Positions 6,666 to 37,526 of a stretch of 64,000 nt of DNA are shown here, piece after piece; position 1 is the stretch's first letter, and each line of letters starts with the position of its first letter. The stretch is from Octopus sinensis. Taxonomy: Eukaryota. The notes beneath the pieces are model-generated. The model had not been told where the DNA came from and did no database searches. It saw nothing but the letters and a program-made list of their open reading frames with translations. The position numbers were made by a program, and so were the translations under genes. The stretch spans positions 98,890,001-98,954,000 of the forward strand of contig NC_043001.1 in NCBI RefSeq assembly GCF_006345805.1, in the 5' to 3' direction.

Positions 6666-7884
6666 ATGAAGCTTTTACTGATAGTTTTTATATGCATTAT
6701 GTCAATATGCATCGTTAATACTACTTGTCCGGAATCATGCCAGTGCAACAAAGAACAAACAAAAGTTTCATGTAAGAGACAATCTCTAACATCAGTCCCT
6801 AAATCATTGCCGACAACTACAGAAGTTCTCTCATTGGAATATAATTTACTACGAGAAATTACAGCAGAGTCTTTCAAAAATTTAGTTAAACTGAAAGAAC
6901 TGGTTTTAACATCAAACAAAATTTCAGTTATCAGAAAAAATAGTTTTAAATACCAATCCAAACTGGTCTCTCTTTACTTGATCAACAATATCATCCATAC
7001 CATTGAAAATGGTTCTTTTGTTGGGGCCATTTCTTTAGCTAGTATTTATCTGAATTCAAATCAACTAAAAGATGTTCCATGTCTTTATGGTTTAATCTCA
7101 TTGAAACATCTACTCATAAATACCAATCAAATTTCAGAAGTATTCTTTCCTGCTGAATATAGGCAAATAAAAAATCTCACTTATATAAATCTTTCTAATA
7201 ACAAAATAAACCGTCTTACTGTTAATTCTCTTATGAATTTAAATGAGTCAAATATAAAGAAGATCTCATTTTCAAGAAATCAAATCACAAATATTGAACC
7301 AGAAACATTTCGTGTCCTAAGTAACATAAATTCTTTGAATCTTGCAGAAAACCCTTTCACAGCAGATGTCCTTAAAAACTCTCTCTATGCAATGAGAAAT
7401 TTTAACCTTCGCTCTTTGGATCTTTCTGGATTAAAAAAGATAAATGTTCTTGCAGATAACATATTTGAAGCATTACAAAATACTTCCCTTCAAACACTAA
7501 TCTTAAGTCATAGTAACATCTCACGTGTCAGCAGCAACACATTCAAACTATTAGATTCTCTTGAAGTTCTGAAGCTAGATTTTTGTCAAATTGCCAGTTT
7601 AGAAGAATCTACATTCACAAATTTGACTCATTTAAGAAGGCTCTTTCTGAATGGCAATTACATATCTAAGCTAACAGCAGTTTTCCCATCGAAACTACTT
7701 TATTTGTACCTGAACAGTAATAAGATTCAGAAAGTCCCAAGCAAAGTTTTTGATGAGCTGTTTCATTTGATAGAACTTCACCTACAGTACAATAAAATTG
7801 TACAGTTCGACAAAGACGCATTTATAGGCCTGGAGAATCTCAAGACTTTGAAGTTACAACACAATCATATTAATGTTATTCCAG
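6666..7884 (+). CDS. Toll-like receptor copy A, coding exon 1 (signal peptide, LRRNT, LRRs); join(6666..7884,9171..10462), 836 aa
   Basis: ATG in ACCATGA context after a splice acceptor (TTTGCAG, 6633). Hydrophobic signal MKLLLIVFICIMSICIVNT, LRRNT CPESCQC..VSC, repeated LxxLxLxxN. Donor CCAG|GTGAGT, phase 1. Confidence 0.95.
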
Positions 7885-8639
7885 GTGAGTAATAAAAGTT
7901 ATCTTTTAAAGCAGACAAATAGCATTATGCTTTATTGAGTCTCAAGAAAGAGACACAGTTGATTTTGATGGTGGTGTGCCACCCTCCTGGCTGAGGAGTA
8001 AAAACAAAATGCCTCAGTAGATATAGTGCTGAACAACTAATCCTTATGTTAAAGTATTCTTCAAGCACTTGTGTATTTAGATACAATGCTTGTTTATTTA
8101 GGGAGTGCATTTATGTATTTAGGGAATTATACTTGTCTATTTAGGGATTTTCTTGTCAATTTAGCACTTAATTTTATATGCCTCGGTATTCAGTATCGTC
8201 TGAGAATGCTACTTATCAGAAACTATCTTTTCATCTACTTGGGGCCTGAAATATGGAGGGCTGCACCATTTAAGCTCTATGAACAGGCTGTATCAAAGGC
8301 ATACTGCTATAAAAAGTGACAAGAGTAAGAAAGTTAGATGATTTCCTATAAAAACTTTAATTAGAGGTATTAGTTAGAGTTTGTGAGGAGAGACTACTGC
8401 AATGGGTGTAATTTTCTAGATGAAGAAAAACCCTGTTATTTAATATTATAGCATCAGGTCAGTCATGACTGAGCAGAACAATGACTGTTGATGTTCCAGC
8501 TTTGAGCAACCTTTCCTTTTAGTGGGTATTTCTAGTGCTACATTTGCCAATGCTTCCTTCTTTTTTAAGACTGAGGGCTTGGAATTTTGAGGAAAGTATC
8601 ATGGTTTGTGAATACATTATACATGAGGGAGTAAAAGAA

Positions 8640-8887
8640 AGTAGTAAAGTTCCTTCCTGAATCATATAGACTCATAGGGATAGTTTCCATGGCATGAATA
8701 TATTCCCCACCTAGACAGGACACTAGTCTGTTGCAGGATTACTCATTTTTACCAGCCGAGTGGACTGGAGCAAAATGAAATGAAGTGTTTTGCTCAAGAA
8801 CACAACGTGTGAGTTGGTCCAGATATCAAAACCACGATTTTACAATTATGAGTCCAACACCCTAACCACTATGCCACATGCCTCCAC
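8640..8887 (-). mobile_element. tRNA-derived SINE in the TLR-A intron (orthologue 35716-35963)
   Basis: Reverse strand GTGGAGGCATGTGGCATAGTGGTTAGGGTGTTGGACTC tRNA-like head, then GTGTTCTTGAGCAAAACACTTCATTTC core. Confidence 0.75.
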
Positions 8888-9170
8888 TATGCATGAGGGA
8901 AGTAGAACTAAAATCAAGATAAAATAAGTTATTGAAGGGTAAGATACATATGTTTTGGGTTTATAGAACAACTTATTCTTACATCAATGCATAATTGATA
9001 TATGAAAGAAGTAAGGTGTGAGGAAAAGGTGCCGCCATCGGTCAAGGCTGCTGCACAACTAATGTGCAATGCCTGGAACTGGGTATGAGGATAATGAAAA
9101 CATGTACCTGACATTATGATTATAGAACGTTGTGATGTATGATGCAATGTTTATCTATTATTTCTTGCAG

Positions 9171-10462
9171 GTGGTTTATTTTCTACATTGGCTGGTCTGT
9201 CAGATTTACAACTTGGTTCCAATGACATAACTACTATACCTGAAGAAATTTTCATCAGACTAAAATCCCTGAGTTTTCTGGATCTATCCAATAATCATAT
9301 TTCCAAGATGCCCAAAAGTTTTTCAAAAGAGTTAACTCGAATAAGAAAATTATATTTAGATTCTAACAAACTTGGGAAATTCTTATCTACTGACAAAAAG
9401 GGCTTCCTGCTGAGTGGTCTTAAAAATTTGGAAAGAATTGATTTATCTTATAATGAAATTCAAGGCCATTTGTCTAAGAAAATCTTTCAAAACAATAAAC
9501 ATCTGAAATATATCTATTTCAGGGGAAATAAAATTACTGGATGGGAAAACAACACATTTGAGGTAACAAATTTAACACTGATGGAACTTGATGTCAGTAA
9601 TAACTTCATAATTACTTTTGATAGTGATTCTTTAAAGTATATAAACAGGAAGAAAAAGTTCAACATTACTTTGAACCCATTTGCATGTGACTGCAATCTT
9701 CGTTGGTTCAGGGACTGGTTAAATACTACAACAGTAGATATTGTAGACAAAAACGACTTGATGTGCAACAGTCCTCCAGATTGGCAGGGCAAGAAATTAC
9801 TTGATTTCAGTCGGTCAAAGATAGATTGTACTGACTATACGCTTTACTATATCTTAGCTGGTGGAGGTGGAGGTTTTCTCTTAACTGTTGTCATAGTTAT
9901 ATTTGCATACACTAAACGTTGGTACATCAAATTTAAGATGTTTAAACTTTATCAGTATGTACAGAAATCAGGCAATGAAAAAGAGTATGAAGCTATACCT
10001 GGAGATGACATGTATTTCGATGGGTACATCAGTTACTCTGACAAAGATAGTGAATGGGTTGAAAAGTATTTGATGCACACGTTTGATAATGGAGAAAATG
10101 GAGAAAATAAGAACAATGGAAACTTTAAACTTTGCTTTCGAAACAGGGACTTTGCTTATGGAAAATATATTATTGGAATGATAGAAAGTTCTCTGGCTGT
10201 GAGTAAGAAAATGATAGTGGTTCTAACACCATATTATAAAAAGGACAAGAGATGTGAATTTGAATTGCAACTTGGTATTATGAAGCTTAATATAAGGAAT
10301 GTGATGCCTATTGTGCTCAAAAACTTACAACCAAATCAGATTCCCAATAGTCTGAAAGAAATCTTTGAAACAAATAAATTTATTGAATGGGACAATAATG
10401 AGTATGCTACAAATTTTATAAAACGTAAACTGGAAAATTTCCTTAATGAACAGAACCTCTAA
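9171..10462 (+). CDS. Toll-like receptor copy A, coding exon 2 (LRRs, LRRCT, TM, TIR)
   Basis: Acceptor TTCTTGCAG|GT restores the frame (IP-GGLFSTLAGL). LRRCT NPFACDC...C...C; TM YYILAGGGGGFLLTVVIVIFAY; TIR box1 FDGYISYSDKD and LCFRNRDFAYG; stop TAA at 10460-10462. Confidence 0.95.
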
Positions 10463-10833
10463 ATATATATAGTTCATAACTATTAAGTATGTATGTATAT
10501 ATATATATATATATATATACTCTTTAAGGGTCAGCTTGTAAATTCATGATGCAATGTAAGCCACAGTCACTTCTGTGGTATAAAGACAAATCAAAAGATA
10601 ACTTAGAGTGAAAACTTTGAAAATCTTGCTGGAAAGAGTGCATTTTCCAAATTTCAAATCTCAAAAGGTACTTCATCCAGAGTAGTTACTGGAAAAGAGG
10701 AAAAGAATCAAGAAAACAAAAGTCTTCCTGCAAAGCATCATTGTTCACATTGTAATTTTCCATTTGCTGTCTTTTTATTTAATCCTGAAAATATTTTATA
10801 TGTAAAGCATGTACTCATTAATTTTTTACCCAT

Positions 10834-10919
<86 letters not shown>

Positions 10920-10929
10920 GTATATCTAT

Positions 10930-11558
10930 AGTTCATAGATGAGAATCAGATATTCCCCATATAGAATACACTTAGTAGTGCTCGAGATTTAAACTTGAGC
11001 ATGTATAGAAGTAAATGTAGAGAGAAGCGAGTTCGACAGATCAATATATAAAGTATATCAAATACATGAAATACAAAAAAATGTTTATATATGTTTACAT
11101 ACAAAAAGGTCCTACTTACAGAGAATACGAATAACATAGAGAATTAAAGGTGTTGAAGAAAACTAATACAAATCCAACAGCTGTTTCTGGGGGCTCAGTG
11201 GTTCAAAATAATGTTTGTAGATTAATTCCATTGTAGAATGAGACAAGCCTCCATCTTCAGGGAAGAGATCTTATGTTTGAGGTGTTGGAGGAAAGAAGTT
11301 CAAAGATGGAATGATTTTTGTGGAGAGTTAAGTGTATCAGCAGGGAATTGGGGAGGTATTCAGAGAAAGAATAGTAGAAGGAGAAAATAAATTTCATGTA
11401 AACATATGTACATTTTGTATTTCATGTATTTAATATACTTTATATATTGATCTGTCTAACTTATCCCTACATTTACTTCTATATCTGCTCAAGTTTAAAT
11501 CTTTTGACCTCTACTAAGTGTATTCTATATGGGACTATCTGATTCTCATCTATGAACT
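10930..11558. mobile_element. Foldback element: ~170 bp inverted arms (10930-11100, 11396-11558) around a ~295 bp core with a hammerhead motif, flanked by (TA)n; probable inverted PLE pseudo-LTR
   Basis: AGTTCATAGATGAGAATCAGAT...ATGTTTACAT is the imperfect reverse complement of ATGTAAACAT...CTCATCTATGAACT. PLE origin is inferred from the hammerhead and the inverted architecture. Confidence 0.7.
11173..11263 (-). ncRNA. Type I hammerhead-ribozyme-like motif, intact core
   Basis: Minus strand: TCC-CTGAAGA-TGGAGGCT...AGCCCCCA-GAAA-CAGCTG-TT-GGA. Stem II 7/8 paired, palindromic stem III ACAGCTGT, GUU triplet, 3-bp stem I. Confidence 0.65.
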
Positions 11559-12004
11559 GTATATATATATATTTAATTATATATATATATATATATATAT
11601 ACTCTCTCTCTTTCTCTCTGTGTATATATATATATCAACAAGCACATGTCAACTGCTACATACAGCAAACACACACACATTAGCCTCACATATACACATG
11701 TCCATACACATACTCAGACATCCATACACACACACACAGTTGCCCACACATACATACTCACAAACTAGCCCCTATTCTACATACACATTCACACACACCA
11801 TTATGAGATATACACACGTGCTAGCGCACCTTAGTTTGTTGTGGTCACCATTACTGCTGTTGTTCTTGTTGTTATCATCGTTATCATCATCATCATCATC
11901 ATCATCATCACCATCATCATCATCATCTCCTCCATTCATTCAGTCTCTTTTTTTCCAGTTATCTGGAACACACACATGCACACACACACACATATATATA
12001 CACA

Positions 12005-12500
12005 TTTAATGTCTGTTTTCCATTCTGATATGGGTTGGATGGTTTGACAGGTGGTGGCTAGGCTTCATATCTGTTTTGACATAGTTTCTAGGCTAGATGC
12101 CCATCGTAATGCCAACTACATTCTAAAGTGTACTGCTTCCATACCTGAAATTTCTTCTCTAGTTCTGCTAGTGACTCAGCAAGGTCATCAGTGTAGATAA
12201 GTTCGCAAAGGCAGCCAATCATAAATTCCTCTGTTATAGCCTGGAGGACTATGATAATCAAGAAGGGACTGAGAACCAATCCCTAGTGAAATCCTGCTTG
12301 CACTCTAAATTCTTTGCTATACTCATTGGCAACTTTCACTTTTCTGACAAGGTCTCTGTACATGGCTTTTACAGCTCTCACCAACCATTTATCTATCCCT
12401 AGCTTCCACATTGCCCTTCGGATAAGAGAACGGGGTACCCTGTCAAAAGCTTCCTCCACGTCAACAAAAGCCAGATACAGAGGTTTATTTTTGGCCAAGT
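12005..12500 (-). mobile_element. Internally deleted RTE-clade LINE fragment (RT core joined to 3' tail)
   Basis: ORF pieces KPLYLAFVDVEEAFDRVPR, GLVLSPFLIIIVLQAITEEF, LIYTDDL, followed by the same 3' tail seen at 16008-16146. Confidence 0.8.
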
Positions 12501-12653
12501 ACTCCTGCTATTACCTCACCAGGAAGATGACAGTAGTGCTTCTTCCTGACACAAAACCAAACTGTCTCTTTTAGGCTAACTCTCTTCCTATTAATTGAGC
12601 TGTGGTCCACCAGGTCCAGCAATTTGATGCCTCTGTAATATACATACTTGTGT

Positions 12654-12691
<38 letters not shown>

Positions 12692-12695
<4 letters not shown>

Positions 12696-14446
12696 CATTA
12701 ATCAACACATACCAAGAAGGACTCACGAACAAGGAGTATGAATACATCACTAACTTCAAATGCAAATCGAGTTTGTTCTATGGTATCCCTAAGGTACACA
12801 AAAGCCAAACCATTAGAGAAACGTGCAAAACATCCACCGACACACTCATCAAAATCCCTTCACCAAATGATTTTAAACTAAGACCGATAATAGCAGGACC
12901 AGCATGTGAAACTCACCGCCTCAGCAATTTCTTAGACACACTCCTTAAACCTTTCCTAAAACACATCAAAAGCTACGCAAGAGACGATATAAATATGCTC
13001 AACCACCTCCCTAAAACAGTCAATGAGAAAACCCTTCTAGTATCATTCGACGTAGTTAATCTTTATTCTAACATCCCTCACAACCTAGGAATAGAAGCGA
13101 TCACCTTCTGGCTGAATAACTACCCCCTTGAACTCCCAACTCGCATAAACAAAGACCTTATAATAGAAGGACTTAGATTCATTTTAGAGAACAATTATTT
13201 TATTTTTGACAATGATTTCTACAGGCAAAGATCGGGAACAGCGATGGGCACGCGTACTGCACCATCTTTTGCCAACCTAGTGATGGGATACCTCGAGAAA
13301 ATTCTATACCGGATGACACTCGAGAAATATGGAAACACCTTCGCCACCTATATCCATAACAACTGGAAAAGATACCTCGATGACTGTTTCATCATCTGGG
13401 ACAAAGGTATAGAGAAACTTGAGGAATTTAAAATACTATTAAATGGAATAAATGACAATATACAATTCACGATGGACCACAACGAAAAAGAATTACCATT
13501 TTTAGACATCCTCATTAAGAAAACCGGCAACAAAATAGAGACAGATATCTACTATAAACCGACAGACTCTAAACAGTACCTACCCTTTGATTCATGCCAC
13601 CCACAACACACTAGAATGAATGTCCCTTTTTGTTTAGCTAGAAGGATTTGCACCATAATATTAGACACAAACACCCGACACACACGTCTCCAGGAACTTA
13701 GAACCACACTCGCAAATAGAAACTATCCACAGCCCCTAATAGACAGTGCAATCCAACGGGTACTTAAATTAAGTATAGAAGACCTGAGACAAACAAAACC
13801 AAAAAAGAAAGAACAATTAAAAACCCTTCCCTACATTTCTACACACAACCCACTCAACAATGAGGCCTTCAACACCATACTACAAAGCACAGCCCTACTA
13901 AAGGGAGACCCAAAGATGAACCGGATCCTCGAAACACACACCATCATTAAAAGTAAACGGCAACCAAAATCCTTGAAAAGGATCTTAACCCAAGCTACAC
14001 TGCACTCAACATCAACCACAAAACCAGCAGTTAGAAAATGTGGAAGGCCCAACTGCGGAATCTGTGTCATCTTGAAAGAAGGATCAGAATTTATACTGGA
14101 ACAAGGCCACCAGTTCACCATTAGAACAAACTTCACCTGCGCATCAGAAAACTTAATTTATGTCATAACATGCGCAGGCTGCAATAGGCAGTATATAGGC
14201 CATACAAAAAATAGCTTACGTAACAGGATGGCGGTGCATAAATCACAAATTAGAAACCCTGATTACCGCAAAATACCGGTCAGCGGACACATAGATAGAT
14301 GTGCTGGAAATGTAAATCCGAAATTTACAACTAACCCGCTCTATAAATTCAGTGACAACGCAACCTTCACACAACGCCAAAATAAAGAACTATATTTCAT
14401 AAAAAAATTTAGACCAAGTTTAAACACCCTGGGCCAGGTATACTAA
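12692..14446 (+). CDS. PLE reverse transcriptase / GIY-YIG endonuclease (N-terminally truncated, no internal stops)
   Basis: FYGIPKVHK, LRPIIAGP, SFDVVNLYSNIP, GTAMGT, RYLDDCF, LPFLDI, YYKPTD; Cys linker CGRPNCGIC (Neptune-like); LIYVITC...QYIGHT, RMAVHKSQI. The ORF's nominal start at 12602 lies in flanking microsatellite. Confidence 0.92.
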
Positions 14447-14617
14447 AACAAAAGATAAGTCCTCCGAAAAGAAGAAGCAAAATTCCACCACGACCGCTAC
14501 TTCAAACAGACACTCACTCTGACGGAAATATACCCAAGTAAAAAAAAGGGAAAAAAATTCTTTCATGCAAATCTGACCCTGATACATACGATACAGCTAT
14601 GGGTCAGACCCGATTCT

Positions 14618-15105
14618 GATTGGTCAACAAGTTGATGACGTCTAGCTCAGCTAGAATGGACAGGATACAAACGGGGGACAGTCATTAGTCAGAATATTGA
14701 TGACGTCCTTTTCTGCTTGAATAGTCACCTAACAAGTACAGACAGGGTGCAGATCTAATGTAGCTATAAGTCGTGATTGGGCAGAATCTGCATGACGTCC
14801 CGTTCTGCTTGACTAACGAAGCGACTGGTCAGGACAGGAAACAAACAAGAGGCAGTTATAATGCAGCGATTGGTCAAAATAATGATGACGTCCCGTTCTA
14901 CTTGACTAACGAAGCGACTGGTCAAAACAGGAAAACAAACAAGAGGAAGTTATAATGCAGCGATTGGTCAAAATAATGATGACGTCCCGTTAAAGCCACC
15001 TAACGAAACGTTGATGACGTTGGTCGAAACGTTGATGACGTCACACTACGCTGAATTGACCACCTAACAGGCATTATAAAACCGAACACTTCACAAAAAC
15101 TCATT
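14618..15105 (+). promoter_or_regulatory. Promoter-like array in PLE 3' region: 5x ATTGG-N12-TGACGTC, 2 extra TGACGT, TATAAAA
   Basis: Composite units at 14618, 14683 (ATTAG variant), 14775, 14868 and 14962. TATAAAA at 15075-15081; TCATT at 15101; CCACCATGG at 15125-15133; donor AG|GTAAAA at 15152/15153. Confidence 0.6.
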
Positions 15106-15404
15106 AGAACCACCCAGCGAACATCCACCATGGGTCATCACATTTGCTTAAGGTAAAAATGAATTCCTCGCTCTTTCGGAAACATCAATCTTCTGTATTG
15201 ACCGCTTTCCATCACTTTGATCTGTTTTTTGTATTGAATACGTATCGCCACCGTGGGCCACTGCATCGAACACTTTGAACATATACTTCAAACTATATAT
15301 CAACTATACATGAACTATATATCAACTATACATGAACTCTAAGATGTCTGACTCCGTTGTGTATTATAAATGAATTTCTTGTGTTTGACGGCATGAGCTG
15401 TCTT

Positions 15405-15477
15405 TTTTTATATATAACTTTTTTTGATAAAGTTCATTTCAGGAACTGAAACATGTTATAATGTATATATATAAAAA
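15405..15477 (+). ncRNA. Decayed hammerhead-like motif in the PLE pseudo-LTR
   Basis: C(T)7GATAA (from CTGATGA), stem II AGTTC/GAACT, GAAA at 15448, stem III ACAT/ATGT, GUA triplet, AT-rich stem I. Confidence 0.45.
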
Positions 15478-15521
15478 TTAAAAATTGTATAATACAGCAG
15501 CATTTTCGAACTTCATTTTTT

Positions 15522-15557
<36 letters not shown>

Positions 15558-15560
<3 letters not shown>

Positions 15561-16143
15561 GTCTCACCAAGGAAATGACTAGAGACCGAGACCTATAGAA
15601 GTATGCTGTGCGTGAGAAGACCCGGCAAGACTAGTGAGGCCATAACCCATGGCCTCTACCTGGGACGTAGTCAGTCCACCTGTGCATACCTTCCTTCTTG
15701 TGACACTTGTGAAGACGTGTTGAGGCAAGTGAAAATCAAACCAAATCAAAATAGATGAACATCAATGGAATTTGTATCTTTGTGGCACATAAGAAAACCA
15801 TCCGAACGTGGCCGTAGCCAGTACCGCATCGACTGGCCTCTGTGCTGTGGGCACGTAACAAACACCATCCGATCGTGGCCGTTCGCCAGCCTCGTCTGGC
15901 ACCTGTGTCGGTGGCACATAAAAAACACCATCCGAGTGTGGCCGTCTGCCAGCCTCGTCTGGCACCTGTGTCGGTGGCACATAAAAACACCCACTACACT
16001 CTCGGAGTGGTTGGCGTTAGGAAGGGCATCCAGCTGTAGAAACACTGCCAGATCTGACTGGCCTGGTGCAGCCTTCAGGCTCCCCAGACCCCAGTTGAAC
16101 CGTCCAACCCATGCTAGCATGGAAAGCGGACGTTAAACGATGA

Positions 16144-16146
<3 letters not shown>
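15558..16146 (+). mobile_element. RTE LINE 3' end (ORF tail, 3' UTR with ~63 bp tandem repeats, (GAT)n tail)
   Basis: GLTKEMTRDRDL...REKTRQ matches the end of the RTE ORF at 54600-55200. Three plus units of GTGGCACATAAAAAACACCATCCG... at 15782-15990. Confidence 0.8.
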
Positions 16147-16188
<42 letters not shown>

Positions 16189-16405
16189 TGTCTTCAAAGC
16201 AAAACTGGATCTCTTCCTGTCAAGGATTCTGGATGAGCCTATCTCATGGCAGAATACACAGATGCGGTCAGAATCGTAAGACTCCCTCCTTCACTAAATG
16301 CCTCATATCAAAGGGGGTTTCAAATAGTGAAAATGTTGTAAAACTCGTGGTGGTGTCTCAGCATGACCACAGTTTTTGAGCTGAAATTAGTTAAAGATTT
16401 AAAGA

Positions 16406-16437
<32 letters not shown>

Positions 16438-16494
16438 TCTTTAAATCTTTAACTTTTGCTTTCAACATGTGATCTCTTAAGCACCACCAGCTCA

Positions 16495-16690
16495 AATATT
16501 TTCTCCTCTGTCTTCCCTCCTTGGGATCTTTCCTTCTCCTTGTTTCCGACGAAGAGCTCCGCTCGAAACGTTAAACCCTCCTTCCCTTCTTTCCTGAGCG
16601 TCAATAATACTTTAATTGTTCCACGTCCTGCGTTGCTGTGTTTTTTTCTCTTTTTTTTCTCTTTTTTTCTGTGTTTTCTTGTTTGGATTA

Positions 16691-16695
<5 letters not shown>
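16495..16695 (+). mobile_element. Short PLE pLTR-like repeat bounded by (TA)n downstream, with hammerhead-like motif at 16542-16576 (sister copy ~26595-26775)
   Basis: GTTT-CCGACGA-A-GAGC-TCC-GCTC-GAAA-CG-TT-AAAC; flanks align with 26600-26775. Confidence 0.6.
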
Positions 16696-16728
<33 letters not shown>

Positions 16729-18575: not shown

Positions 18576-18589
18576 ATATATATATAGGT

Positions 18590-26775: not shown

Positions 26776-26912
<137 letters not shown>

Positions 26913-28010: not shown

Positions 28011-28037
28011 ATTCTTTAATAATTCTAATTCTAATTA

Positions 28038-28114
<77 letters not shown>

Positions 28115-29712
28115 ATGTATATATGTGTGTATGCATGTATGTATGTATATATTCCTTCTTAGGCTCCCAACACAAACCAGTACACATGGCCTTTTCTTCT
28201 CAAAATGTTGATCTTCTGGAATTTCTTCCCTGACTGTTTGTCTTGCAGCTGTCAACTTGCAACTTATTCAAGAGAAATACTGATTTCGTTGACCTTACTG
28301 GTCTCAGAGGGACCTGTGAAAGCTATGATCAGAGCCCCTCTCTCAAGAGCAAGGCAACAAAAGAGATAAAACAAAAAAGGAAAAAAGAAAAGACTGGATT
28401 CCTATCATTTGTTTTATAACAGTATTGTTGCAGGAGTTTTGTTTGACAGTGTCATGTGACCGAAGTCAGCAGTCTTGGGTTGAAGAGTATTTAACGAAGC
28501 TGCTGCCTTTTCAGGAAAGTCAAGTTTGCTTTGTTTCAATGACAATGTAATAATAGTGGTGCTACTGGCAGGGTTTTGAGAATTTATACAGTCTGATACA
28601 GATGGAAAAGCCAATACCCTATAAATATTTTCTCAATTTTGTTTTGTAATAAGCTGGAGAAGGCTGCTTAATTATTGCTAATACAAACTGTCAAACTAAT
28701 TACTATGTTAATAGGTGGAATTATATTCTAATATACTTCCTTAGTGACAAAGGGAATGACATCCTGCAAAGAAACAAGGGGAGTTAAATATTTCCTATTT
28801 CTCAGAAACAGCAGAGTGCCAGAATAAACGGTAAGCAGAAGTGTGGCTGACTAAATTCTTTTCACAACCAAGGAATCCTTTTATTTAAAGGTATTTTCTC
28901 CTAGACTCAAAGCTTTTGAAAGGTACGATCTACTCAATAAGCTTACTTTGTTAACTAACAACAAACTTGTCTCAGCTCAGTTTCATCGTTTAAGCTGGAA
29001 GATATATGAAACTAATTAATTATATGTTTTACACTGCAGCATTGTAAAAGTTTTGAACACATTTCACAGACACTCCCACTCTCCCACCATATTACTTCTG
29101 TTTGCCCCCCCCCCCCACTGGTATCTGTTAATCCTAAATTAGGAACAGCGGAACAGCTGCTTTACAGTATTAGTCTTGTTTCTCTGTGCTCTGTGTCCAA
29201 AACTCACCAGTGCTACTCTTTCACATTCATGTAGTCAAATCCTGTTTCCTTTATCCCCTAAGGTTAATGATGCATCTGTCAACCCCAACTTTTTCAACTA
29301 ACAATTTTCACAAACCATACATCTCTAGCTTGATTAAATTATTTCTAGTATTCTTCATCTTTACCTTTCAGCTCTGTGTAAAACATAGGCTCTCAACATA
29401 TAACTTCCAAGTCCTTCTCTTATCTTGTGTAATTGTTTTCTCTATTGGCATCCCTAGAAGAATGTCATCAGTCACTGAGACAGAGAAATTCCTTCCTTGC
29501 CTATTGAAACAGGTAGGTTTGTTTTGCTTTCCCTTGATATTTTCATTGCAAAAAATGTTTTTAATGCAGCAAACCTGTTAGCCATATACACAACCACCAA
29601 CCTGAAAGACTATATATTTTATGATCAGATGAAGCTAATTGAGCCAGATTTCTACAGCTGGTTGCCTTTCTTGTCACAGACCCTTACCTGCTTCCAAGCA
29701 AGATAATGTTTC

Positions 29713-29819
29713 CCCATAGCCAGTCATGTTTATGCCAAATATTGGGAATGAATGACATCCATTTATAAACCTCACGTGATGTCAAGACAAGGAAACACAT
29801 CTGCGCTCACACATAGATT

Positions 29820-29864
<45 letters not shown>

Positions 29865-30116
29865 GAGGAATAAAGGTAGAATGAGGTATTTTTGCCTCTT
29901 GGCTGAAACAGCTGTAAGTTATTTTCCCAATTTATATTCCTGTATGTTATATTTTAATAATTACTGGTATCTTTATATAATAATATATTTTTATATGTAA
30001 AGCATAATATGTTATACATGTATATTCTTGTAATTGTCATTTTAGTAAATAGATAAGTTGACATAATATGTCTAGAAGTTGACAAACCACCTATTGATCC
30101 CCTCCGTTTTCTTATT

Positions 30117-30211
<95 letters not shown>

Positions 30212-30347
30212 AACACATACATACACACCCAACACATACACACCCATGGCCAGTCATGTTTATGCCAAATATTGGGAATGAATGACATCCATTTATAATC
30301 CTCACGTGATGTCAAGTCAAAGAAACACAACTGCGCTCACACATAGA

Positions 30348-30352
<5 letters not shown>
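29713..30352 (+). repeat. ~110 bp direct repeat (29713-29821 and 30243-30352); single copy in copy A at 5027-5128
   Basis: CCCATRGCCAGTCATGTTTATGCCAAATATTGGGAATG...CTGCGCTCACACATAGA occurs twice. Confidence 0.85.
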
Positions 30353-30386
<34 letters not shown>

Positions 30387-32127
30387 CACATATATAAATT
30401 TAAAATAATTAGAGGCATAGATTAATGAAATAATACACAAAGCATTCAGTAACAACGATAAACATAAAAAATACACAAAGAAATTAACTCTAAAATATCT
30501 CTTGTAGCAATATCTAGTAGTCACTGTTAATTATTGTCTGAGGGTTCAATGAAGATATTTGCTTGTGATCTCGTTTTCCACAACCTCACACATACAAAGA
30601 ATACTTATTTGTAACTTGCTATTATTTGTTCTAAAACAAATGAAGGTGTCTATCACCTCCTTCACTGAGTTTCAGTGGACTTCTTGTAAAGATGTTGTTG
30701 TTGTTGTTTAGTCACAAACTGTTTCTTGGACAACATTATCCATTGTGTCATTCTTTAAAAGTAATAGGATATTTTTTAGGAGTGATTTGGCTGGTACTTC
30801 AAGCAAGTAGATCAACCACATTGATGGTCTCTGGCAGAACATTTGCTTCATGGCATGAAACTTTTAGTTATTTATTACTGATAAGATAATCTGTGTAAAT
30901 ATCATTAACTCTCATACACATTAGGTAGCAGGGGGTCCTGAACCTATCAAAAATGAACGATTTACTATCTAGGCTTCTAATATAGAATTACCTGCAGATT
31001 CATATGGATGAACATTCCTTATGATTGGCATGTTAATCCTATGTTCAGCTGAAGATTCTAAGGGTCCAATGAAGACAGTAGCACCATGCACATATACCAT
31101 ATCAACTACTCTATAAAGAACATACCTACACTTTGCAATAGCCTATACATGAGAATGCTCCCATGAAAATGCTCCTGGAGAGCATTCTTATGTATATGTT
31201 GTTAACAGTTCTAGTTGAACATATGCATTGGATGGCCTTATCTTTTTCTGAAATGACAGCTTCTGTCACTGAACACTACAAAAGACAGACAGGCAAATAC
31301 CTACCTGTCTTTGTATCTTAGAAACCCAGCACCCTTTGAAGCTGACCTCCTAGATCAAATATCTGTATTTACTTACATAAAATTTCATAAGTACACTAAC
31401 CTTTTCTGAGTTAAACTAACACTAGAAAATTTAGAAAATCAAAGAAACAGATTTGTCTTTTCTGATAAGACTAAACATGTATAAGTAGTAGAGCGAGATA
31501 GATATGATGAATTGTTACATGAGGCTATAGAAAATATAAAAGGTAAACCAGACTTATAATGACATTGATGAAGAGGCAAAATATCTAAGTAAATTATGTC
31601 AAATTAACAATATTATAGAATGTTAACCTAAAAGGGAAGCATTTATAGTTTTGAAAGACTTTAGATCTGACTTCACAAAATAATGCACTAGTAGGCTAGT
31701 AAACCTTACAAAAATGGATTAGTAGCCCAAAAATACTGTGGAATATAAACAATACTAGGGAAGTTAAGATCATTCAATTTGATATAATGGACTTTCATGC
31801 CTTCAAGTCAATCTTCATCACTTTGTCCCAAGTTTTCCTTTTCTCTCTCTTCTTTGGGCTTCATTAACTTGGAGGGCTAAGCACTTTTGTATGCAGCAAT
31901 AACTTTCCATATGCATCACATGCCCATAGCAGTGCGATCTCCTCTCTTGTATATTACACTTGATTTCTTTTATACTCAGTTTTTTCCTTTAAGCTCAATT
32001 ATATTCTAGCATTCATGCACATCAACATTACATATCAATCAGATCATACTAGCATAATTTCTTTCTAATTTTTTGCTAGCCTTCAACATTCTTATTACCA
32101 TTCTTACTACCATGCAATGTAACAGTC

Positions 32128-32890
32128 CTAACCAGAAGCATCCCACAATGAGCCCTTCACACTGAGGGGAAAGATCCTTGTTGCCACTCGAGGTAGTAGC
32201 TTCCTGAACGTTTCCCAACCCATTCTTATCCTGATTAAACTTTCAGAGCAAACACCTCCCTTGCTAATTATGTCTCCTAGGCAACAAAAGCTATCAACTA
32301 CTTCTAGTGAACCATCTGAGCATTTAAGAATCCTTTTTTCAGTACACCCATAGTACATATTTCTCCAAATCATTCTATGAGTATGCCTTTGATTTTGGTA
32401 CACCTTTTATATATTCATAGCTTATACTAGGTACAGTGTATTGAGTTTATACTTACTCCTTTACTACATATCAAGCAAAGCTAGTTTCTTGATGATACTG
32501 GGATCCTATCTTCTTTCCTATCTAGCAAAACCTTAGTCTTTGTTAAGTTTACTCTGATGTCTCAATTTTAGGTTTGGCTTCCATGCCAGAAATTTCCTCT
32601 CTAATTCCACTCTAGATTCAGATTTGAGAACTAGATCTTCAGTATATAGGGTTTCTTATGGACAGAAATTCCTCTGTGATGGCCTGTTGAGCTAAGATAA
32701 ATAGGAGATGGCTGAGGACCAAGACTTGATGGACATCAAATTTGTCATTGAAATCATTGTTGACTTTCACTTTACTTACTGCATTATTGTACATAGCTTG
32801 TAAAGACCTCACAAGCCATTCATCTACCCTTAGTTTCCTCATTGACCACCATTCTACTGAATGTGGTACTTTATCAGATGTCTTCTCCAA
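32128..32890 (-). mobile_element. Degenerate RTE-clade LINE fragments (copy B specific)
   Basis: DKVPHSVEWWSMRKLRVDEWLVR, LSHLLFILAQQAITEEF, LEVVDSFCCLGDII...RIRMGWETFRKLLP. Confidence 0.75.
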
Positions 32891-33740
32891 GTAGAAGGAG
32901 AGAGAAAGTTATCCTCAAAACAAAGACTTAGCTTCAATGTGTGCAACAGAATAAACTCTGCTAAAGTCACCCAAGGATCAGGTGGTAGTGTTGAACTGGG
33001 TGAAGGATTAAGTCTATTGCATAGGAAGGCCAAAGTGGGATTTGAATTCAGAATGGAAAGAATTGGGAAAAATACCACAATGCATCCAGACCAGTATTCT
33101 TCAATTCAGCTGAGCCAACACCCTAGAATGCTACTTTGATTTTTAACAAAAAGTATGAAAAGCAAAGTTGACCAGCAAGATTTAAATTCAGATCAAAAAG
33201 AGTTGGAACTAATGCTGCAAGACATTTTATTTGCTGATCGAGTGATCTTTGCCAATAATATGCATTCCTAATATCTAGGCATAAAAATCTGAATAAAAAA
33301 ACAATGTATATCGTACATGAATAAATATGGTATACTTGCATCTCAGTAACCCAATCAGTTATATTGCTTGGACACACTGTAAAAACAATTATAACTAATC
33401 TCTAAATTAAGTAGAAGGCTTAGACTCACCTCTCCCTCGGTACTCTCCCAGTATTTATTTTATCAATACTGGAAGGATGAAAGGACAAAACAACTATAGC
33501 AGTATTTGAACTCAGAACATAAAGATATGCAACTGAATACTGTAAGGCATTTTGTACAATACTGTAACTATTCATTCCAACTAGCACTCTGTAGGGACAC
33601 TGTATAATTGGTGGGGGTTTGTATTAATTTTATTTATGTTTCTTAATTTTAAAAATCATTGAATTAAAATAATTAAAAGATTACCATTTCCTATGTTTGT
33701 CTTTGCAGAAACAAACATCAAAATAAAGAACATTGTAACC

Positions 33741-34959
33741 ATGAAGCTTTTACTGATAGTTTTTATATGCATTATGTCAATATGCATCGTTAATACTACT
33801 TGTCCGGAATCATGCCAGTGCAACAAAGAACAAACAGAAGTTTCATGTGAGAGACAATCTCTAACATCAGTCCCTAAATCATTGCCGACAACTACAGAAT
33901 CTCTCAAATTGGCTTATAATTTACTACGAGAAATTACAGCAGAGTCTTTCAAAAATTTAGTTAAACTGAAAAAACTGGTTTTAACATCAAACAAAATTTC
34001 AGTTATCAGAAAAAATAGTTTTAAATACCAATCCAAACTGGTCTCTCTTTACTTGATCAACAATATCATCCATACCATTGAAAATGGTTCTTTTGTTGGG
34101 GCCATTTCTTTAGCTAGTATTTATCTGAGTTCAAATCAACTAAAAGATGTTCCATGTCTTTATGGTTTAATCTCATTGAAACATCTACTCATAAATACCA
34201 ATCAAATTTCAGAAGTATTCTTTCCTGCTGAATATAGGCAAATAAAAAATCTCACTTATATAAATCTTTCTAATAACAAAATAAACCGTCTTACTGTTAA
34301 TTCTCTTATAAATTTAAATGAGTCAAATATAAAGAGGATCTCATTTTCAAGAAATCAAATCACAAATATTGAACCAGAAACATTTCGTGTCCTAAGTAAC
34401 ATAAATTCTTTGAATCTTGCAGAAAACCCTTTCACAGCAGATGTCCTTAAAAACTCTCTCTATGCAATGAGAAATTTTAACCTTCGCTCTTTGGATCTTT
34501 CTGGATTAAAAAAGATAAATGTTCTTGCAGATAACATATTTGAAGCATTACAAAATACTTCCCTTCAAACACTAATCTTAAGTCATAGTAACATCTCACG
34601 TGTCAGCAGCAACACATTCAAACTATTAGATTCTCTTGAAGTTCTGAAGCTAGATTTTTGTCAAATTGCCAGTTTAGAAGAATCTACATTCACAAATTTG
34701 ACTCATTTAAGAAGGCTCTTTCTGAATGGCAATTACATATCTAAGCTAACAGCAGTTTTCCCATCGAAACTACTTTATTTGTACCTGAACAGTAATAAGA
34801 TTCAGAAAGTCCCAAGCAAAGTTTTTGATGAGCTGTTTCATTTGATAGAACTTCACCTACAGTACAATAAAATTGTACAGTTCGACAAAGACGCATTTAT
34901 AGGCCTGGAGAATCTCAAGACTTTGAAGTTACAACACAATCATATTAATGTTATTCCAG
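33741..34959 (+). CDS. Toll-like receptor copy B, coding exon 1; join(33741..34959,36247..37526), 832 aa
   Basis: Paralog of 6666-7884; acceptor at 33708, donor CCAG|GTGAGT; 9 aa differences from copy A. Confidence 0.95.
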
Positions 34960-36246
34960 GTGAGTAATAAAAGTTATCTTTTAAAGCAGACAAATAGCAT
35001 TATGCTTTATTGAGTCTCAAGAAAGAGACACAGTTGATTTTGATGGTGGTGTGCCACCCTCCTGGCTGAGGAGTAAAAACAAAATGCCTCAGTAGATATA
35101 GTGCTGAACAACTAATCCTTATGTTAAAGTATTCTTCAAGCACTTGTGTATTTAGATACAATGCTTGTTTATTTAGGGAGTGCATTTATGTATTTAGGGA
35201 ATTATACTTGTCTATTTAGGGATTTTCTTGTCAATTTAGCACTTAATTTTATATGCCTCGGTATTCAGTATCGTCTGAGAATGCTACTTATCAGAAACTA
35301 TCTTTTCATCTACTTGGGGCCTGAAATATGGAGGGCTGCACCATTTAAGCTCTATGAACAGGCTGTATCAAAGGCATACTGCTATAAAAAGTGACAAGAG
35401 TAAGAAAGTTAGATGATTTCCTATAAAAACTTTAATTAGAGGTATTAGTTAGAGTTTGTGAGGAGAGACTACTGCAATGGGTGTAATTTTCTAGATGAAG
35501 AAAAACCCTGTTATTTAATATTATAGCATCAGGTCAGTCATGACTGAGCAGAACAATGACTGTTGATGTTCCAGCTTTGAGCAACCTTTCCTTTTAGTGG
35601 GTATTTCTAGTGCTACATTTGCCAATGCTTCCTTCCTTTTTTAAGACAGAGGGCTTGGAATTTTGAGGAAAGTATCATGGTTTGTGAATACATTATACAT
35701 GAGGGAATGAAAGAAAGTAGTAAAGTTCCTTCCTGAGTCTTGTAGACTCATAGGGATAGTTTCCATGGCATGAATATATTCCCCACCTAGACAGGACACT
35801 AGTCTGTTGCAGGATTACTCATTTTTGCCAGCCGAGTGGACTGGAGCAAAATGAAATGAAGTGTTTTGCTCAAGAACACAACGTGTCAGTTGGTCCAGAT
35901 ATCAAAACCACGATTTTACAATTATGAGTCCAACACCCTAACCACTATGCCACATGCCTCCACTATGCATGAGGGAAGTAGAACTAAAATCAAGATAAAA
36001 TAAGTTATTGAAGGGTAGGATACATATGTTTTGGGTTTATAGAACAACTTATTCTTACATCAATGCATAATTGATATATGAAAGAAGTAAGGTGTGAGGA
36101 AAAGGTGCCGCTATCGGTCAAGGCTGCTGCACAACTAATGTGCAATGCCTGGAACAGGGTATGAGGATAATGAAAACATGTACCTGACATTATGATTATA
36201 GAACGTTGTGATGTATGATGCAATGTTTATCTATTATTTCTTGTAG

Positions 36247-37526
36247 GTGGTTTATTTTCTACATTGGCTGGTCTGTCAGATTTACGACTTGGTTCCAATG
36301 ACATAACTACTATACCTGAAGAAATTTTCATCAGACTAAAATCCCTGAGTATTCTGGATCTATCCAATAATCATATTTCCAAGATGCCCAAAAGTTTTTC
36401 AAAAGAGTTAACTCGAATAAGAGAATTATATTTAGATTCTAACAAACTTGGGAAATTCTTATCTACTGACAAAAAGGGCTTCCTGCTGAGTGGTCTTAAA
36501 AATTTGGAAAGAATTGATTTATCTTATAATGAAATTCAAGGCCATTTGTCTAAGAAAATCTTTCAAAACAATAAACATCTGAAATATATCAATTTCAAGG
36601 GAAATAAAATTACTGGATGGGAAAACAACACATTTGAGGTAACAAATTTAACACTGATGGAACTTGATGTCAGTAATAACTTCATAATTACTTTTGATAG
36701 TGATTCTTTAAAGTATATAAACAGAAAGAAAAAGTTCAACATTACTTTGAACCCATTTGCATGTGACTGCAATCTTCGTTGGTTCAGGGACTGGTTAAAT
36801 ACTACAACAGTAGATATTGTAGACAAAAACGACTTGATGTGCAACAGTCCTCCAGATTGGCAGGGCAAGAAATTACTTGATTTCAGTCGGTCAAAGATAG
36901 ATTGTACTGACTATACGCTTTACTATATCTTAGCTGGTGGAGGTGGAGGTTTTCTCTTAACTGTTGTCATAGTTATATTTGCATACACTAAACGTTGGTA
37001 CATCAAATTTAAGATGTTTAAACTTTATCAGTATGTACAGAAATCAGGCAATGAAAATGAGTGTGAAGCTGTACCTGGAGATGACATGTATTTTGATGGG
37101 TACATCAGTTACTCTGACAAAGATGGTGAATGGGTTGAAAAGTATTTGATGCACACGTTTGATAATGGAGAAAATGGAGAAAATAAGAACAATGGAAACT
37201 TTAAACTTTGCTTCCGAAACAGGGACTTTGCTTATGGAAAATATATTATTGGAATGATAGAAAGTTCTCTGGCTGTGAGTAAGAAAATGATAGTGGTTCT
37301 AACACCATATTATAAAAAAGACAAGAGATGTGAATTTGAATTGCAACTTGGTATTATGAAGCTTAATATAAGAAATGTGATGCCTATTGTGCTCAAAAAC
37401 TTACAACCAAATCAGATTCCCAATAGTCTGAAAGAAATCTTTGAAACAAATAAATTTATTGAATGGGACAATAATGAGTATGCTACAAATTTTATAAAAC
37501 GTAAACTGGAAAATTTCCTTAATTAA
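36247..37526 (+). CDS. Toll-like receptor copy B, coding exon 2
   Basis: Acceptor TTCTTGTAG|GT; LRRs, LRRCT, TM, TIR. A GAA>TAA change removes the last 4 residues (EQNL). Confidence 0.95.

What the first reader, a model, noticed from the sequence alone, without database searches (positions are those of the whole stretch)
6666..37526. Twin TLRs diverge almost only at the concave ligand-facing LRR positions
By-eye comparison (A>B) gives 14 ectodomain substitutions: K33E, K37E, V54S, S56K, E58A, E78K, N130S, M190I, K199R, Q420R, F442I, K466E, Y522N, R524K. Eleven sit at positions 3, 5 or 7 of LxxLxLxxN, which are the solvent-exposed concave beta-strand residues, and two more flank the LRRNT strand. 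I found only one synonymous ectodomain change (R566). The cytoplasmic part has 4 replacements, 4 synonymous changes and a stop. Many changes alter charge, and three adjacent codons (54, 56, 58) each differ by two nucleotides. This resembles the hypervariable pattern of lamprey VLRs and plant LRR receptors, and suggests strong diversifying selection or patch exchange to change ligand specificity.
Basis: partly seen in the sequence, partly recalled or inferred. Interest (0 to 1): 0.85.

Follow-up and report, generated by a model that had tools for sequence, protein, structure and literature searches.

The report
Octopus twin Toll-like receptors, converted yet divergent
Two neighbouring octopus immune-receptor genes are kept nearly identical by copying sequence between each other, yet they stay different at the inner-surface residues likely to contact a ligand. 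This is a clear new example of a known way in which such receptors evolve.

Summary
Copy A (6666-7884 + 9171-10462) and copy B (33741-34959 + 36247-37526) differ by 14 ectodomain replacements and 1 synonymous change. The cytoplasmic part has 4 replacements, 4 synonymous changes and E833*. Eleven of the 14 replacements lie at positions 3/5/7 of LxxLxLxxN (P≈5e-9). An AlphaFold model puts its beta-strands there.

The window is Octopus sinensis CM016863.1. O. vulgaris has both loci in the same order, so these are two real genes, not haplotypes or sequencing errors. Eleven of the 14 replacements are shared by both species.

The lack of synonymous change comes largely from gene conversion:
- The gene body is 98.3% identical, while the flanks differ by about 5.4%.
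- A 1297-bp tract has no differences. The O. vulgaris pair differs at 47 sites across the wider 7079-8406 stretch.
- An upstream third copy, or allele, has an A backbone carrying B's N-terminal patch.

In tracts with no fixed neutral difference among 1041 sites, 14 replacement differences persist (P=2.6e-6). The rate ratio dN/dS (omega) is 0.23-0.29 in the cytoplasmic part.

Verdict: concerted evolution with selection keeping the concave-face differences. This is a new member of a known kind, like the avian TLR1/2 genes and plant R genes. The ligand is unknown.

The parts
4685..4825 (+). Copy A upstream non-coding exon (acceptor CAG|CTCTG, donor CAG|GTAGGT); it splices to the acceptor at 6631
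   Evidence: Its peptide is present in the RefSeq read-through model P0123 and was located in the window
6666..7884 (+). Copy A CDS exon 1: signal peptide, LRRNT and LRR1-15, up to codon 407 phase 1
   Evidence: ORF and GTGAGT donor; Pfam LRR_8 E = 2.7e-66
7885..9170 (+). Copy A intron (GT-AG, phase 1)
   Evidence: Splice sites read directly; the same junction occurs in O. vulgaris and Argonauta
9171..10462 (+). Copy A CDS exon 2: LRR16-22, LRRCT, TM helix 629-654 and TIR; stop at 10460-10462 (836 aa)
29372..29512 (+). Copy B upstream non-coding exon
   Evidence: 6 differences from A in a 191-bp stretch that contains the exon
33741..34959 (+). Copy B CDS exon 1
34960..36246 (+). Copy B intron (GT-AG; the acceptor reads TAG where A has CAG)
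36247..37526 (+). Copy B CDS exon 2; TAA at codon 833 (832 aa)
   Evidence: The same stop occurs in both O. vulgaris copies. O. bimaculoides has Glu at this codon and Argonauta has Asp at the aligned position
6142..10848 (+). Homogenised gene core of copy A (98.3% identical to B)
   Evidence: Self-BLAST and alignment
33249..37940 (+). Homogenised gene core of copy B
7262..8558 (+). Tract of 1297 bp with no A/B difference. This is the A-to-B gene-conversion tract in the O. sinensis lineage (A coordinates)
   Evidence: permutation gave 0 of 200,000. vulB differs from A at 47 sites over the wider 7079-8406 stretch. Of the 24 such sites that O. bimaculoides covers (7379-8406), it marks 15 as A-derived
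34337..35634 (+). The same conversion tract in B coordinates (B is the recipient)
6762..6897 (+). N-terminal island of divergence: codons 33, 37, 54, 56, 58, 78 (LRRNT strand, LRR1, LRR2). Nine base differences, all replacements, shared with O. vulgaris. The B counterpart is 33837-33972
   Evidence: no fixed neutral difference among 585 neutral sites in 6142-7078
9210..9522 (+). C-terminal island: codons 420, 442, 466, 522, 524 (LRR16, 17, 18, 20). All are replacements, all are derived in B, and all are shared with O. vulgaris. The B counterpart is 36286-36598
3480..5443 (+). Upstream flank of the duplicated block (A). It is 88.7-94.9% identical to 28114-30158
10896..12609 (+). Downstream flank of the duplicated block (A). 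It is 87-93% identical to 38318-40218. Homology continues at 15995-20405 against 40345-42126
12690..15530 (+). Penelope-like retroelement (RT + GIY-YIG) inserted only in A's downstream flank. It is a marker that distinguishes the loci, not part of the receptor
   Evidence: Pfam RVT_1 and GIY-YIG; absent at the matching place in O. vulgaris A and in the upstream O. sinensis copy

Best explanation
The finding covers two real, intact, tandem Toll-like receptor genes of Octopus sinensis.

Each receptor has one cysteine cluster, about 22 LRRs, a TM helix and a TIR domain. Its ectodomain fold is closest to TLR3.

The duplication predates the O. sinensis / O. vulgaris split. Since then the two gene bodies have repeatedly copied sequence into each other (interlocus gene conversion, also called concerted evolution). 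This wipes out neutral differences.

Replacement differences survive on the concave beta-sheet, at positions 3/5/7 of LxxLxLxxN and in the LRRNT strand. They form two islands, LRRNT-LRR2 and LRR16-20. Selection most likely keeps them there, because they give the two receptors different recognition surfaces. Copy B carries most of the derived states.

Conversion also moves whole blocks of these residues between loci.

Shown here: the two loci, the mosaic structure, the conversion tracts, the site-class pattern and the purifying selection elsewhere.

Inferred: that the concave face binds a ligand, and that the differences change specificity.
For: 1. Two loci. The window equals O. sinensis CM016863.1 at 100% identity. 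O. vulgaris OX597818.1 carries collinear A and B loci about 25 kb apart, each matching its own flanks. All five CDSs are intact.

2. Conversion.
- The core is 98.3% identical, while flank mismatch is 5.4%.
- A tract of 1297 bp has no differences (0 of 200,000 permutations).
- O. vulgaris B differs from A at 47 sites in the wider 7079-8406 stretch. O. bimaculoides covers 24 of them and shows 15 of those A-type states to be derived. So sinB received A sequence.
- At sites 8880 and 9007 the paralogues share a state within each species but differ between species.
- The upstream copy sin1 has A-type flanks and an A-type 3' half, but B-type codons 33-199.

3. Selection.
- 11 of 14 replacements lie at positions 3/5/7, P = 4.5e-9.
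- The independent vulB-only set has 9 of 26 at 3/5/7 and 15 of 26 at x positions, P = 1e-3 and 9e-6.
- For vulA against vulB, dN at 3/5/7 is 0.147 against ectodomain dS of 0.040, Fisher P = 3e-4.
- Omega is 0.25 for the rest of the ectodomain and 0.23-0.29 for the cytoplasmic part.
- In the homogenised tracts there are 0 fixed neutral differences in 1041 sites, against 14 fixed replacements in 698 sites, P = 2.6e-6.
- A is fully conserved between the species (0 N, 3 S). B's exon 2 is identical between the species.

4. Structure. The AlphaFold model (pLDDT 88.3) places strands at HCS positions 3-5.
Against: - No ligand is known. The nearest solved fold, TLR3 (TM-score normalised to the target, TMt, 0.75), binds dsRNA on a lateral face, not the concave one.
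- In the only clearly unconverted tract (O. vulgaris codons 200-406), omega at positions 3/5/7 is about 1.9 and is not significant (P = 0.28). Repeated adaptive substitution is therefore not proven apart from the persistence argument.
- Conversion lowers dS, which inflates pairwise omega.
- N130S, M190I and K199R are confined to O. sinensis. Their age relative to the conversion is unclear.
- There are no population data and no copy-specific expression data. Only the A type has a matching cDNA record, AUR53649.1 from O. vulgaris.
- No model coordinates were available, so exposure and clustering in space were not measured.
Confidence: 0.75

Rival explanations
1. A recent burst of adaptive change. 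The gene bodies were fully homogenised shortly before the O. sinensis / O. vulgaris split. The concave replacements then arose quickly by positive selection, mostly in B. No selection against conversion is needed.
For: Nine of the 11 polarisable trans-specific replacements are derived in B. No fixed neutral difference surrounds them. Three further replacements (N130S, M190I, K199R) and no synonymous change arose in O. sinensis B alone.
Against: - Three codons within 15 bp each need two base changes, with derived states on both lineages (A: S54V, A58E; B: S56K). This fits older divergence better.
- O. vulgaris B keeps an old tract with dS 0.074 that shows the same site pattern.
- Synonymous divergence there exceeds that of the adjacent intron (7.4% against 1.5%, P = 5e-4). 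That is expected if conversion is tolerated outside the LRR-coding part but not inside it.
Confidence: 0.15
2. No adaptive meaning. The x positions of LRR strands are simply unconstrained, and the patchwork of conversion tracts happened to leave those differences behind.
For: In the unconverted O. vulgaris tract, omega at positions 3/5/7 is not significantly above 1. dN at the concave sites (0.09-0.15) is at or above the upper end of the oldest neutral divergence seen (flanks 5.4%, dS 7.4%).
Against: - Neutral sites would be homogenised along with their neighbours, yet 14 replacements persist among 1041 neutral sites with no fixed difference (P = 2.6e-6).
- The same residues are kept in two species.
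- The other variable repeat positions are also little constrained in LRR proteins, but carry few changes (P = 2e-6 against non-consensus positions only).
- A shows no replacements at all between the species.
Confidence: 0.07
3. Assembly artefact. A and B are two haplotypes of one locus placed in tandem, or the differences are sequencing errors.
For: - The O. sinensis assembly has 5.2% duplicated BUSCOs (PMC10700109).
- The upstream copy sin1 differs from A's flanks by only 1.13%. That is close to octopus heterozygosity (1.22%) and below the 1.4-1.5% divergence from O. vulgaris.
- So sin1 itself may be an uncollapsed haplotype.
Against: - For A against B, the flanks differ by 5.4% and by indels.
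- Both loci sit collinearly in the purge_dups-collapsed O. vulgaris assembly (PMC10700109).
- The diagnostic differences are shared across species.
Confidence: 0.03

Closest known systems
Vertebrate TLR1-family paralogues: avian TLR1A/1B and TLR2A/2B, mammalian TLR1/TLR6 (Huang et al. 2011, PMC3125219; penguin TLRs, PMC8788240)
   Same: They are adjacent TLR paralogues with nearly identical gene-converted regions. Positive selection is predicted at functionally important ectodomain residues.
   Different: The octopus gene is unrelated: a mollusc receptor with one cysteine cluster and a TLR3-like fold. Here conversion covers most of the ectodomain and leaves two small islands of replacements. 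The selected sites lie on the concave strands, not in a lipopeptide pocket. One conversion tract is dated by comparing sister species.
Hypervariable solvent-exposed xxLxLxx residues of plant LRR resistance genes in tandem clusters (my own knowledge: Parniske et al. 1997; Michelmore and Meyers 1998)
   Same: Replacements exceed synonymous changes at the x positions of the beta-strand motif. Sequence is exchanged between tandem paralogues.
   Different: The octopus array has two or three copies, not a large cluster. The loci are stable orthologues across the two species, and the A copy is strongly conserved.
[quoted passage not shown] 2023, PMC10279657)
   Same: Tandem duplicates show episodic positive selection that is stronger in the extracellular LRR region than in the TIR domain.
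   Different: [quoted passage not shown] This is a minimal pair, not an expansion. The papers I searched do not mention conversion in this pair.
Lamprey and hagfish variable lymphocyte receptors
   Same: Variation is concentrated on the concave beta-sheet positions of an LRR solenoid.
   Different: VLR diversity is made somatically from cassette arrays flanking an incomplete germline gene. Here both germline genes are complete, and the window holds no LRR cassettes.
Vertebrate TLR3, the name given in the databases
   Same: It is the best solved structural match (3ulv_A, TMt 0.75, 24% identity). It also has a single LRRCT cysteine cluster, and the BB-loop proline is replaced.
   Different: The name rests on best-hit annotation, and orthology was not shown. 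TLR3 binds dsRNA on a lateral face, whereas the octopus differences lie on the concave face.

Membership tests
Toll-like receptor with a single cysteine cluster (sccTLR / V-type) | N-terminal signal peptide and an LRRNT cap | tested here: met
   Hydrophobic helix at residues 3-16, followed by CPESCQC...VSC. The Pfam LRRNT score of 19.3 bits is below the 25.8 cut-off, but AlphaFold gives the cap strand at 33-35.
Toll-like receptor with a single cysteine cluster (sccTLR / V-type) | A continuous LRR solenoid with one membrane-proximal LRRCT cysteine cluster | tested here: met
   LRR_8 E = 2.7e-66. There are 22 regularly spaced strands, then NPFACDC...C...C. No internal cysteine cluster is present.
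Toll-like receptor with a single cysteine cluster (sccTLR / V-type) | A single TM helix followed by a cytoplasmic TIR domain | tested here: met
   Helix at 629-654. Pfam TIR scores 37 bits against a cut-off of 21.3, and TIR_2 scores 32.1 against 28.
Orthologue of vertebrate TLR3 | Phylogenetic orthology, and dsRNA binding on the lateral face | tested here: inconclusive
   TLR3 is the top structural hit, but at 24% identity. TLR13, TLR5, RP105 and TLR4 score close behind. No phylogeny was built and no binding residues were examined.
Concerted evolution of tandem paralogues by interlocus gene conversion | The gene body is much more similar than the flanking duplicated DNA | tested here: met
   1.2% mismatch in the core against 5.4% in the flanks.
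Concerted evolution of tandem paralogues by interlocus gene conversion | Mosaic history: different segments group the copies differently, and some states are shared by paralogues within a species | tested here: met
   - 6762-6897 groups sinB, vulB and sin1 together.
- 7079-8406 sets vulB apart from all the others.
- 8559-10848 groups sinA, vulA and sin1 together.
- Sites 8880 and 9007 are species-specific but shared by the paralogues.
Diversifying selection on solvent-exposed LRR residues (the pattern of plant R genes and VLRs) | Replacements are concentrated at the x positions of the LxxLxLxxN strand | tested here: met
   11/14, 18/37, and an independent 9/26 at positions 3/5/7.
Diversifying selection on solvent-exposed LRR residues (the pattern of plant R genes and VLRs) | dN significantly above dS at those positions | tested here: inconclusive
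   The excess is significant against ectodomain-wide dS in both species (P = 3e-4 and 3e-6), but conversion lowers dS. In the unconverted tract omega is about 1.9 with P = 0.28. Site models such as PAML or MEME were not available.
VLR-like somatic cassette assembly | An incomplete germline gene flanked by partial LRR cassettes | tested here: not met
   Both germline ORFs are complete. tblastn finds only the four TLR exons in the 64 kb.

The most novel reading that the evidence does not exclude
The array may work as a small germline cassette system. Interlocus conversion would move whole concave-surface modules (the N-terminal island at codons 33-199 and the C-terminal island at codons 420-524) between the loci. 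Octopus populations would then carry combinatorial receptor alleles (A/A, B/A, B/B and so on), kept by balancing selection. This would be a population-level route to recognition diversity in an animal group reported to have the smallest TLR repertoire among molluscs. The chimeric upstream copy, if it is really an allele of the A locus, would be the first such recombinant seen.
Probability: 0.2. Interest if true: 0.7.

Novelty: new member of a known kind. Interest (0 to 1): 0.5.

Why it matters
Cephalopods lack adaptive immunity and are reported to have few, little-varied TLRs (PMC10279657). This pair shows that even a minimal octopus TLR array evolves by the same two forces as vertebrate TLR1/2 genes and plant R genes: conversion between copies, and selection on the LRR face.

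The sister-species comparison catches one conversion event in the act. It also marks out 11 residues in two surface patches as candidates for specificity. That makes ligand hunting by A/B ectodomain swaps practical.

The case is also a warning for methods. Pairwise dN/dS between young-looking paralogues can be inflated by conversion. Current gene models are wrong here too: the RefSeq model fuses three genes, and the ENA model of O. vulgaris B is truncated.

Tried and rejected
- I looked for an ectopic donor of the dense patches (A and B codons 52-60; vulB and A codons 220-229), allowing up to 4 mismatches, on both strands of the window and all fetched loci. Only the patches themselves matched. 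A templated micro-conversion from another local LRR is therefore unsupported. Donors elsewhere in the genome could not be searched.
- I looked for further TLR fragments or cassettes in the window by tblastn. None were found.
- Exact-sequence look-up of A and B in the protein collection found neither, because the public O. sinensis model is a three-gene fusion.
- O. bimaculoides could be used only in part. Its contig is 3.3 kb with N gaps, and its N-terminus is known only as protein.
- I searched the literature for an earlier description of this pair. I found only a genome-wide count of 14 TLRs in O. sinensis, cited at second hand, and general mollusc surveys.
- Pfam gave no hit for the downstream low-complexity ORF.
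- I rejected haplotype mis-assembly for A against B, sequencing error, pseudogenisation of B, and a VLR-like cassette system. The reasons are given under the rival explanations and the membership tests.
Full report
**What is there.** The window is AT-rich animal DNA. It matches Octopus sinensis assembly GCA_006345805.1, chromosome CM016863.1, at 100% identity: window 1-40526 equals locus L003 18583-59108. The rest of the window lies beyond the end of the fetched locus and was not compared.

The window holds two copies of a two-exon gene.
- Copy A: CDS 6666-7884 and 9171-10462, 836 aa.
- Copy B: CDS 33741-34959 and 36247-37526, 832 aa.
- Each has a phase-1 GT-AG intron of about 1.29 kb.
- Each has a non-coding upstream exon, at 4685-4825 (A) and 29372-29512 (B).

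The protein is a Toll-like receptor.
- Pfam gives LRR_8 at E = 2.7e-66 and TIR at 37 bits.
- An AlphaFold model (mean pLDDT 88.3) shows an LRRNT strand, 22 evenly spaced LRR strands, one LRRCT cysteine cluster, a TM helix at 629-654 and a TIR fold.
- The closest solved structures are TLR3 ectodomains (3ulv_A; TM-score normalised to the target, TMt, 0.75; 24% identity).
- Public records call it 'toll-like receptor 3' (O. vulgaris CAI9723303 and cDNA AUR53649) or 'TLR13' (O. bimaculoides).

**Checking the observation.**
- There are 14 ectodomain replacements and one synonymous change (R566).
- The cytoplasmic part has four replacements, four synonymous changes and E833*.
- Codons 54, 56 and 58 each differ at two bases.

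Eleven of the 14 replacements sit at positions 3, 5 or 7 of LxxLxLxxN. The AlphaFold strands fall at positions 3-5 of each repeat, and K33 lies in the LRRNT strand. The register is therefore structural, not just pattern-matched.

The enrichment is far beyond chance. P is about 5e-9 against all ectodomain residues and 2e-6 against non-consensus repeat positions only. The rate ratio dN/dS (omega), by the Nei-Gojobori (NG86) method, is 3.0 for the ectodomain and 0.23 for the cytoplasmic part. At positions 3/5/7, dN is 0.094, against 0.0026 for the ectodomain outside the five HCS x positions (2, 3, 5, 7, 8).

**Two loci, not haplotypes or errors.** The duplicated block runs from about 3480-20405 against 28114-42126. 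Its flanks show 5.4% mismatch plus many indels. A Penelope-like retroelement lies only in A's flank, at about 12690-15530.

The chromosome-level O. vulgaris assembly, which was collapsed with purge_dups (PMC10700109), has both loci in the same order about 25 kb apart. Each matches its own O. sinensis flanks at about 98.3-98.7%. All copies are intact. This includes O. vulgaris B, whose public gene model is wrongly truncated at M190.

Eleven of the 14 ectodomain replacements (codons 33, 37, 54, 56, 58, 78, 420, 442, 466, 522, 524) and all the cytoplasmic differences are shared by the two species. N130S, M190I and K199R are confined to O. sinensis, but they occur in two separate copies there.

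**Why synonymous differences are so few: gene conversion.**
- The gene core (6142-10848) has 1.2% mismatch, against 5.4% in the flanks.
- Between 7262 and 8558 there is no difference in 1297 bp (0 of 200,000 permutations).
- O. vulgaris B differs from A at 47 sites in the wider 7079-8406 stretch, which takes in 26 extra replacement codons. O. bimaculoides covers 24 of these sites (7379-8406) and shows the A-type state to be derived at 15 of them. O. sinensis B therefore received A sequence, so this is an A-to-B conversion after the roughly 2.5-My species split (date from PMC10700109).
- Other evidence of exchange: sites 8880 and 9007 are species-specific yet shared by the paralogues, and O. 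vulgaris A carries B's stop codon and some B-type bases in the sequence after its stop codon.
- The RefSeq model XP_036359036.1 is a fusion of three genes. Its first unit lies upstream of the window. That unit has A-type flanks and an A-type 3' half, but B-type codons 33-199. This is a direct case of patch exchange.
- That unit differs from A's flanks by 1.13%. The divergence from O. vulgaris is 1.4-1.5%. Octopus heterozygosity is about 1.22%, and the O. sinensis assembly has 5.2% duplicated BUSCOs (PMC10700109). The unit may therefore be A's other allele rather than a third gene. I cannot decide this here.

**Evidence for selection.** Two tracts have been homogenised: 6142-7078 and 8812-9648.
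- In these tracts the A type and the B type show no fixed difference at 1041 neutral sites (non-coding plus synonymous).
- They show 14 fixed replacement differences at 698 non-synonymous sites (Fisher P = 2.6e-6).
- Conversion has thus removed the neutral differences around these codons but not the replacements, in both species.

An independent set supports the same pattern. The replacements seen only in O. vulgaris B show the same bias: 9 of 26 at positions 3/5/7 and 15 of 26 at x positions (P = 1e-3 and 9e-6).

For the O. vulgaris pair:
- dN at positions 3/5/7 is 0.147, against an ectodomain dS of 0.040 (P = 3e-4).
- Omega is 0.25 for the rest of the ectodomain and 0.29 for the cytoplasmic part.
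- In the middle of exon 1, synonymous divergence (7.4%) exceeds that of the adjacent intron (1.5%; P = 5e-4). This is expected if conversion is tolerated in the intron but selected against across the LRR strands.

Copy A has no replacements between the species (0 N, 3 S). B's exon 2 is identical between the species. Polarising with O. bimaculoides and Argonauta hians (63% identity; a single copy with the same downstream neighbour) shows nine of the 11 shared replacements to be derived in B and two (S54V, A58E) to be derived in A.

**Limits.**
- In the one clearly unconverted tract, omega at the concave sites is about 1.9 and not significant (P = 0.28).
- Conversion lowers dS, so the pairwise omega of 3.0 overstates adaptive change.
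- What is firmly shown is that replacement differences at concave positions are kept despite homogenisation. Whether they also turn over adaptively needs site models on more species.
- 'Ligand-facing' is an inference from general LRR structure. No ligand is known, and TLR3, the nearest fold, binds on a lateral face.
- I could not obtain model coordinates, so I could not measure exposure or clustering in space.

**Mechanism proposed.** A type I receptor pair arose by tandem duplication. The duplication is roughly 5-7% neutral divergence old, and so older than the 2.5-My species split. It happened around or after the split from O. bimaculoides, although this dating is rough.

Interlocus conversion keeps the scaffold, the signalling domain and most of the solenoid identical. 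Divergent selection holds two concave patches apart, one at LRRNT-LRR2 and one at LRR16-20. Seven of the 14 changes alter charge. The two receptors therefore most likely recognise different ligands or partners.

Occasional conversion across a patch creates new combinations. Examples are the erased LRR5-15 differences in O. sinensis B and the chimeric upstream copy. The conversion and the site pattern are shown here. The link to binding is inferred.

**Comparison and novelty.** This is the pattern described for the vertebrate TLR1 family, which combines gene duplication, gene conversion and positive selection (PMC3125219; PMC8788240). It is also the pattern of the solvent-exposed xxLxLxx residues of plant R-gene clusters, and of ectodomain-biased positive selection in expanded invertebrate TLR families (PMC10279657). 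It is not VLR-like in mechanism, because both germline genes are complete and there are no cassettes.

I found no description of this octopus pair in the searchable literature. It is a new member of a known kind. It is a clean, well-dated example in a group said to have small and uniform TLR repertoires.

Noticed in passing
window 12690-15530 (ORF 12602-14446, + strand): A Penelope-like retroelement (reverse transcriptase plus GIY-YIG endonuclease) is inserted in A's downstream flank. It is absent at the matching place in O. vulgaris A and in the upstream O. sinensis copy, so the insertion is recent.
   Followed up: partly
L003 1-15836 (O. sinensis CM016863.1, just upstream of the window): This is a third TLR unit with A-type flanks and B-type codons 33-199. 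Its flanks differ from A's by 1.13%, which is within octopus heterozygosity. It may be an uncollapsed haplotype rather than a third gene.
   Followed up: partly
public gene models for window 6666-37526 and for L001: RefSeq XP_036359036.1 (2622 aa) fuses three separate TLR genes through the upstream non-coding exons. ENA CAI9723304 (O. vulgaris B) starts at M190, although the ORF is intact from M1.
   Followed up: yes
window 4685-4825 and 29372-29512: The shared upstream non-coding exon lies outside the homogenised core, in the flank that is about 95% identical (6 differences in a 191-bp stretch that contains the exon). Any promoter near it would lie there too. The two copies could therefore differ in regulation.
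   Followed up: no
window about 10140-10157 (A) and the matching place in B; residues 732-737: The TIR BB-loop reads RDFAYG instead of the usual RDFxPG. The conserved proline is Tyr in all the Octopus copies examined (O. sinensis, O. vulgaris, O. bimaculoides) and Leu in Argonauta. TLR3, from my own knowledge, also lacks this proline. This may bear on which adaptor is used.
   Followed up: no
window 47188-50646, - strand: An 1152-aa low-complexity ORF, rich in S/G/Q/N and with many SDR/GRPD repeats, has no Pfam hit. A 75-78% identical gene lies just downstream of the single TLR in Argonauta hians, so the neighbourhood is conserved.
   Followed up: partly
window 7312-7867 compared with L001 (O. 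vulgaris B), especially codons 222-228: O. vulgaris B has 8 base changes within 20 bp across the LRR8 strand (NSLNLAE against DCLKIGI). This is far denser than in the surrounding sequence. No local donor sequence was found.
   Followed up: partly
window 10491 / 37568-37577: A (TA)n microsatellite just after the stop codon differs in length among all five copies.
   Followed up: no
window 10852-11100 against 11396-11635 (also 38318-38524 against 38820-39055): Inverted repeats of about 84% identity lie just downstream of each TLR copy. They may be a foldback or MITE-like element within the duplicated block.
   Followed up: no
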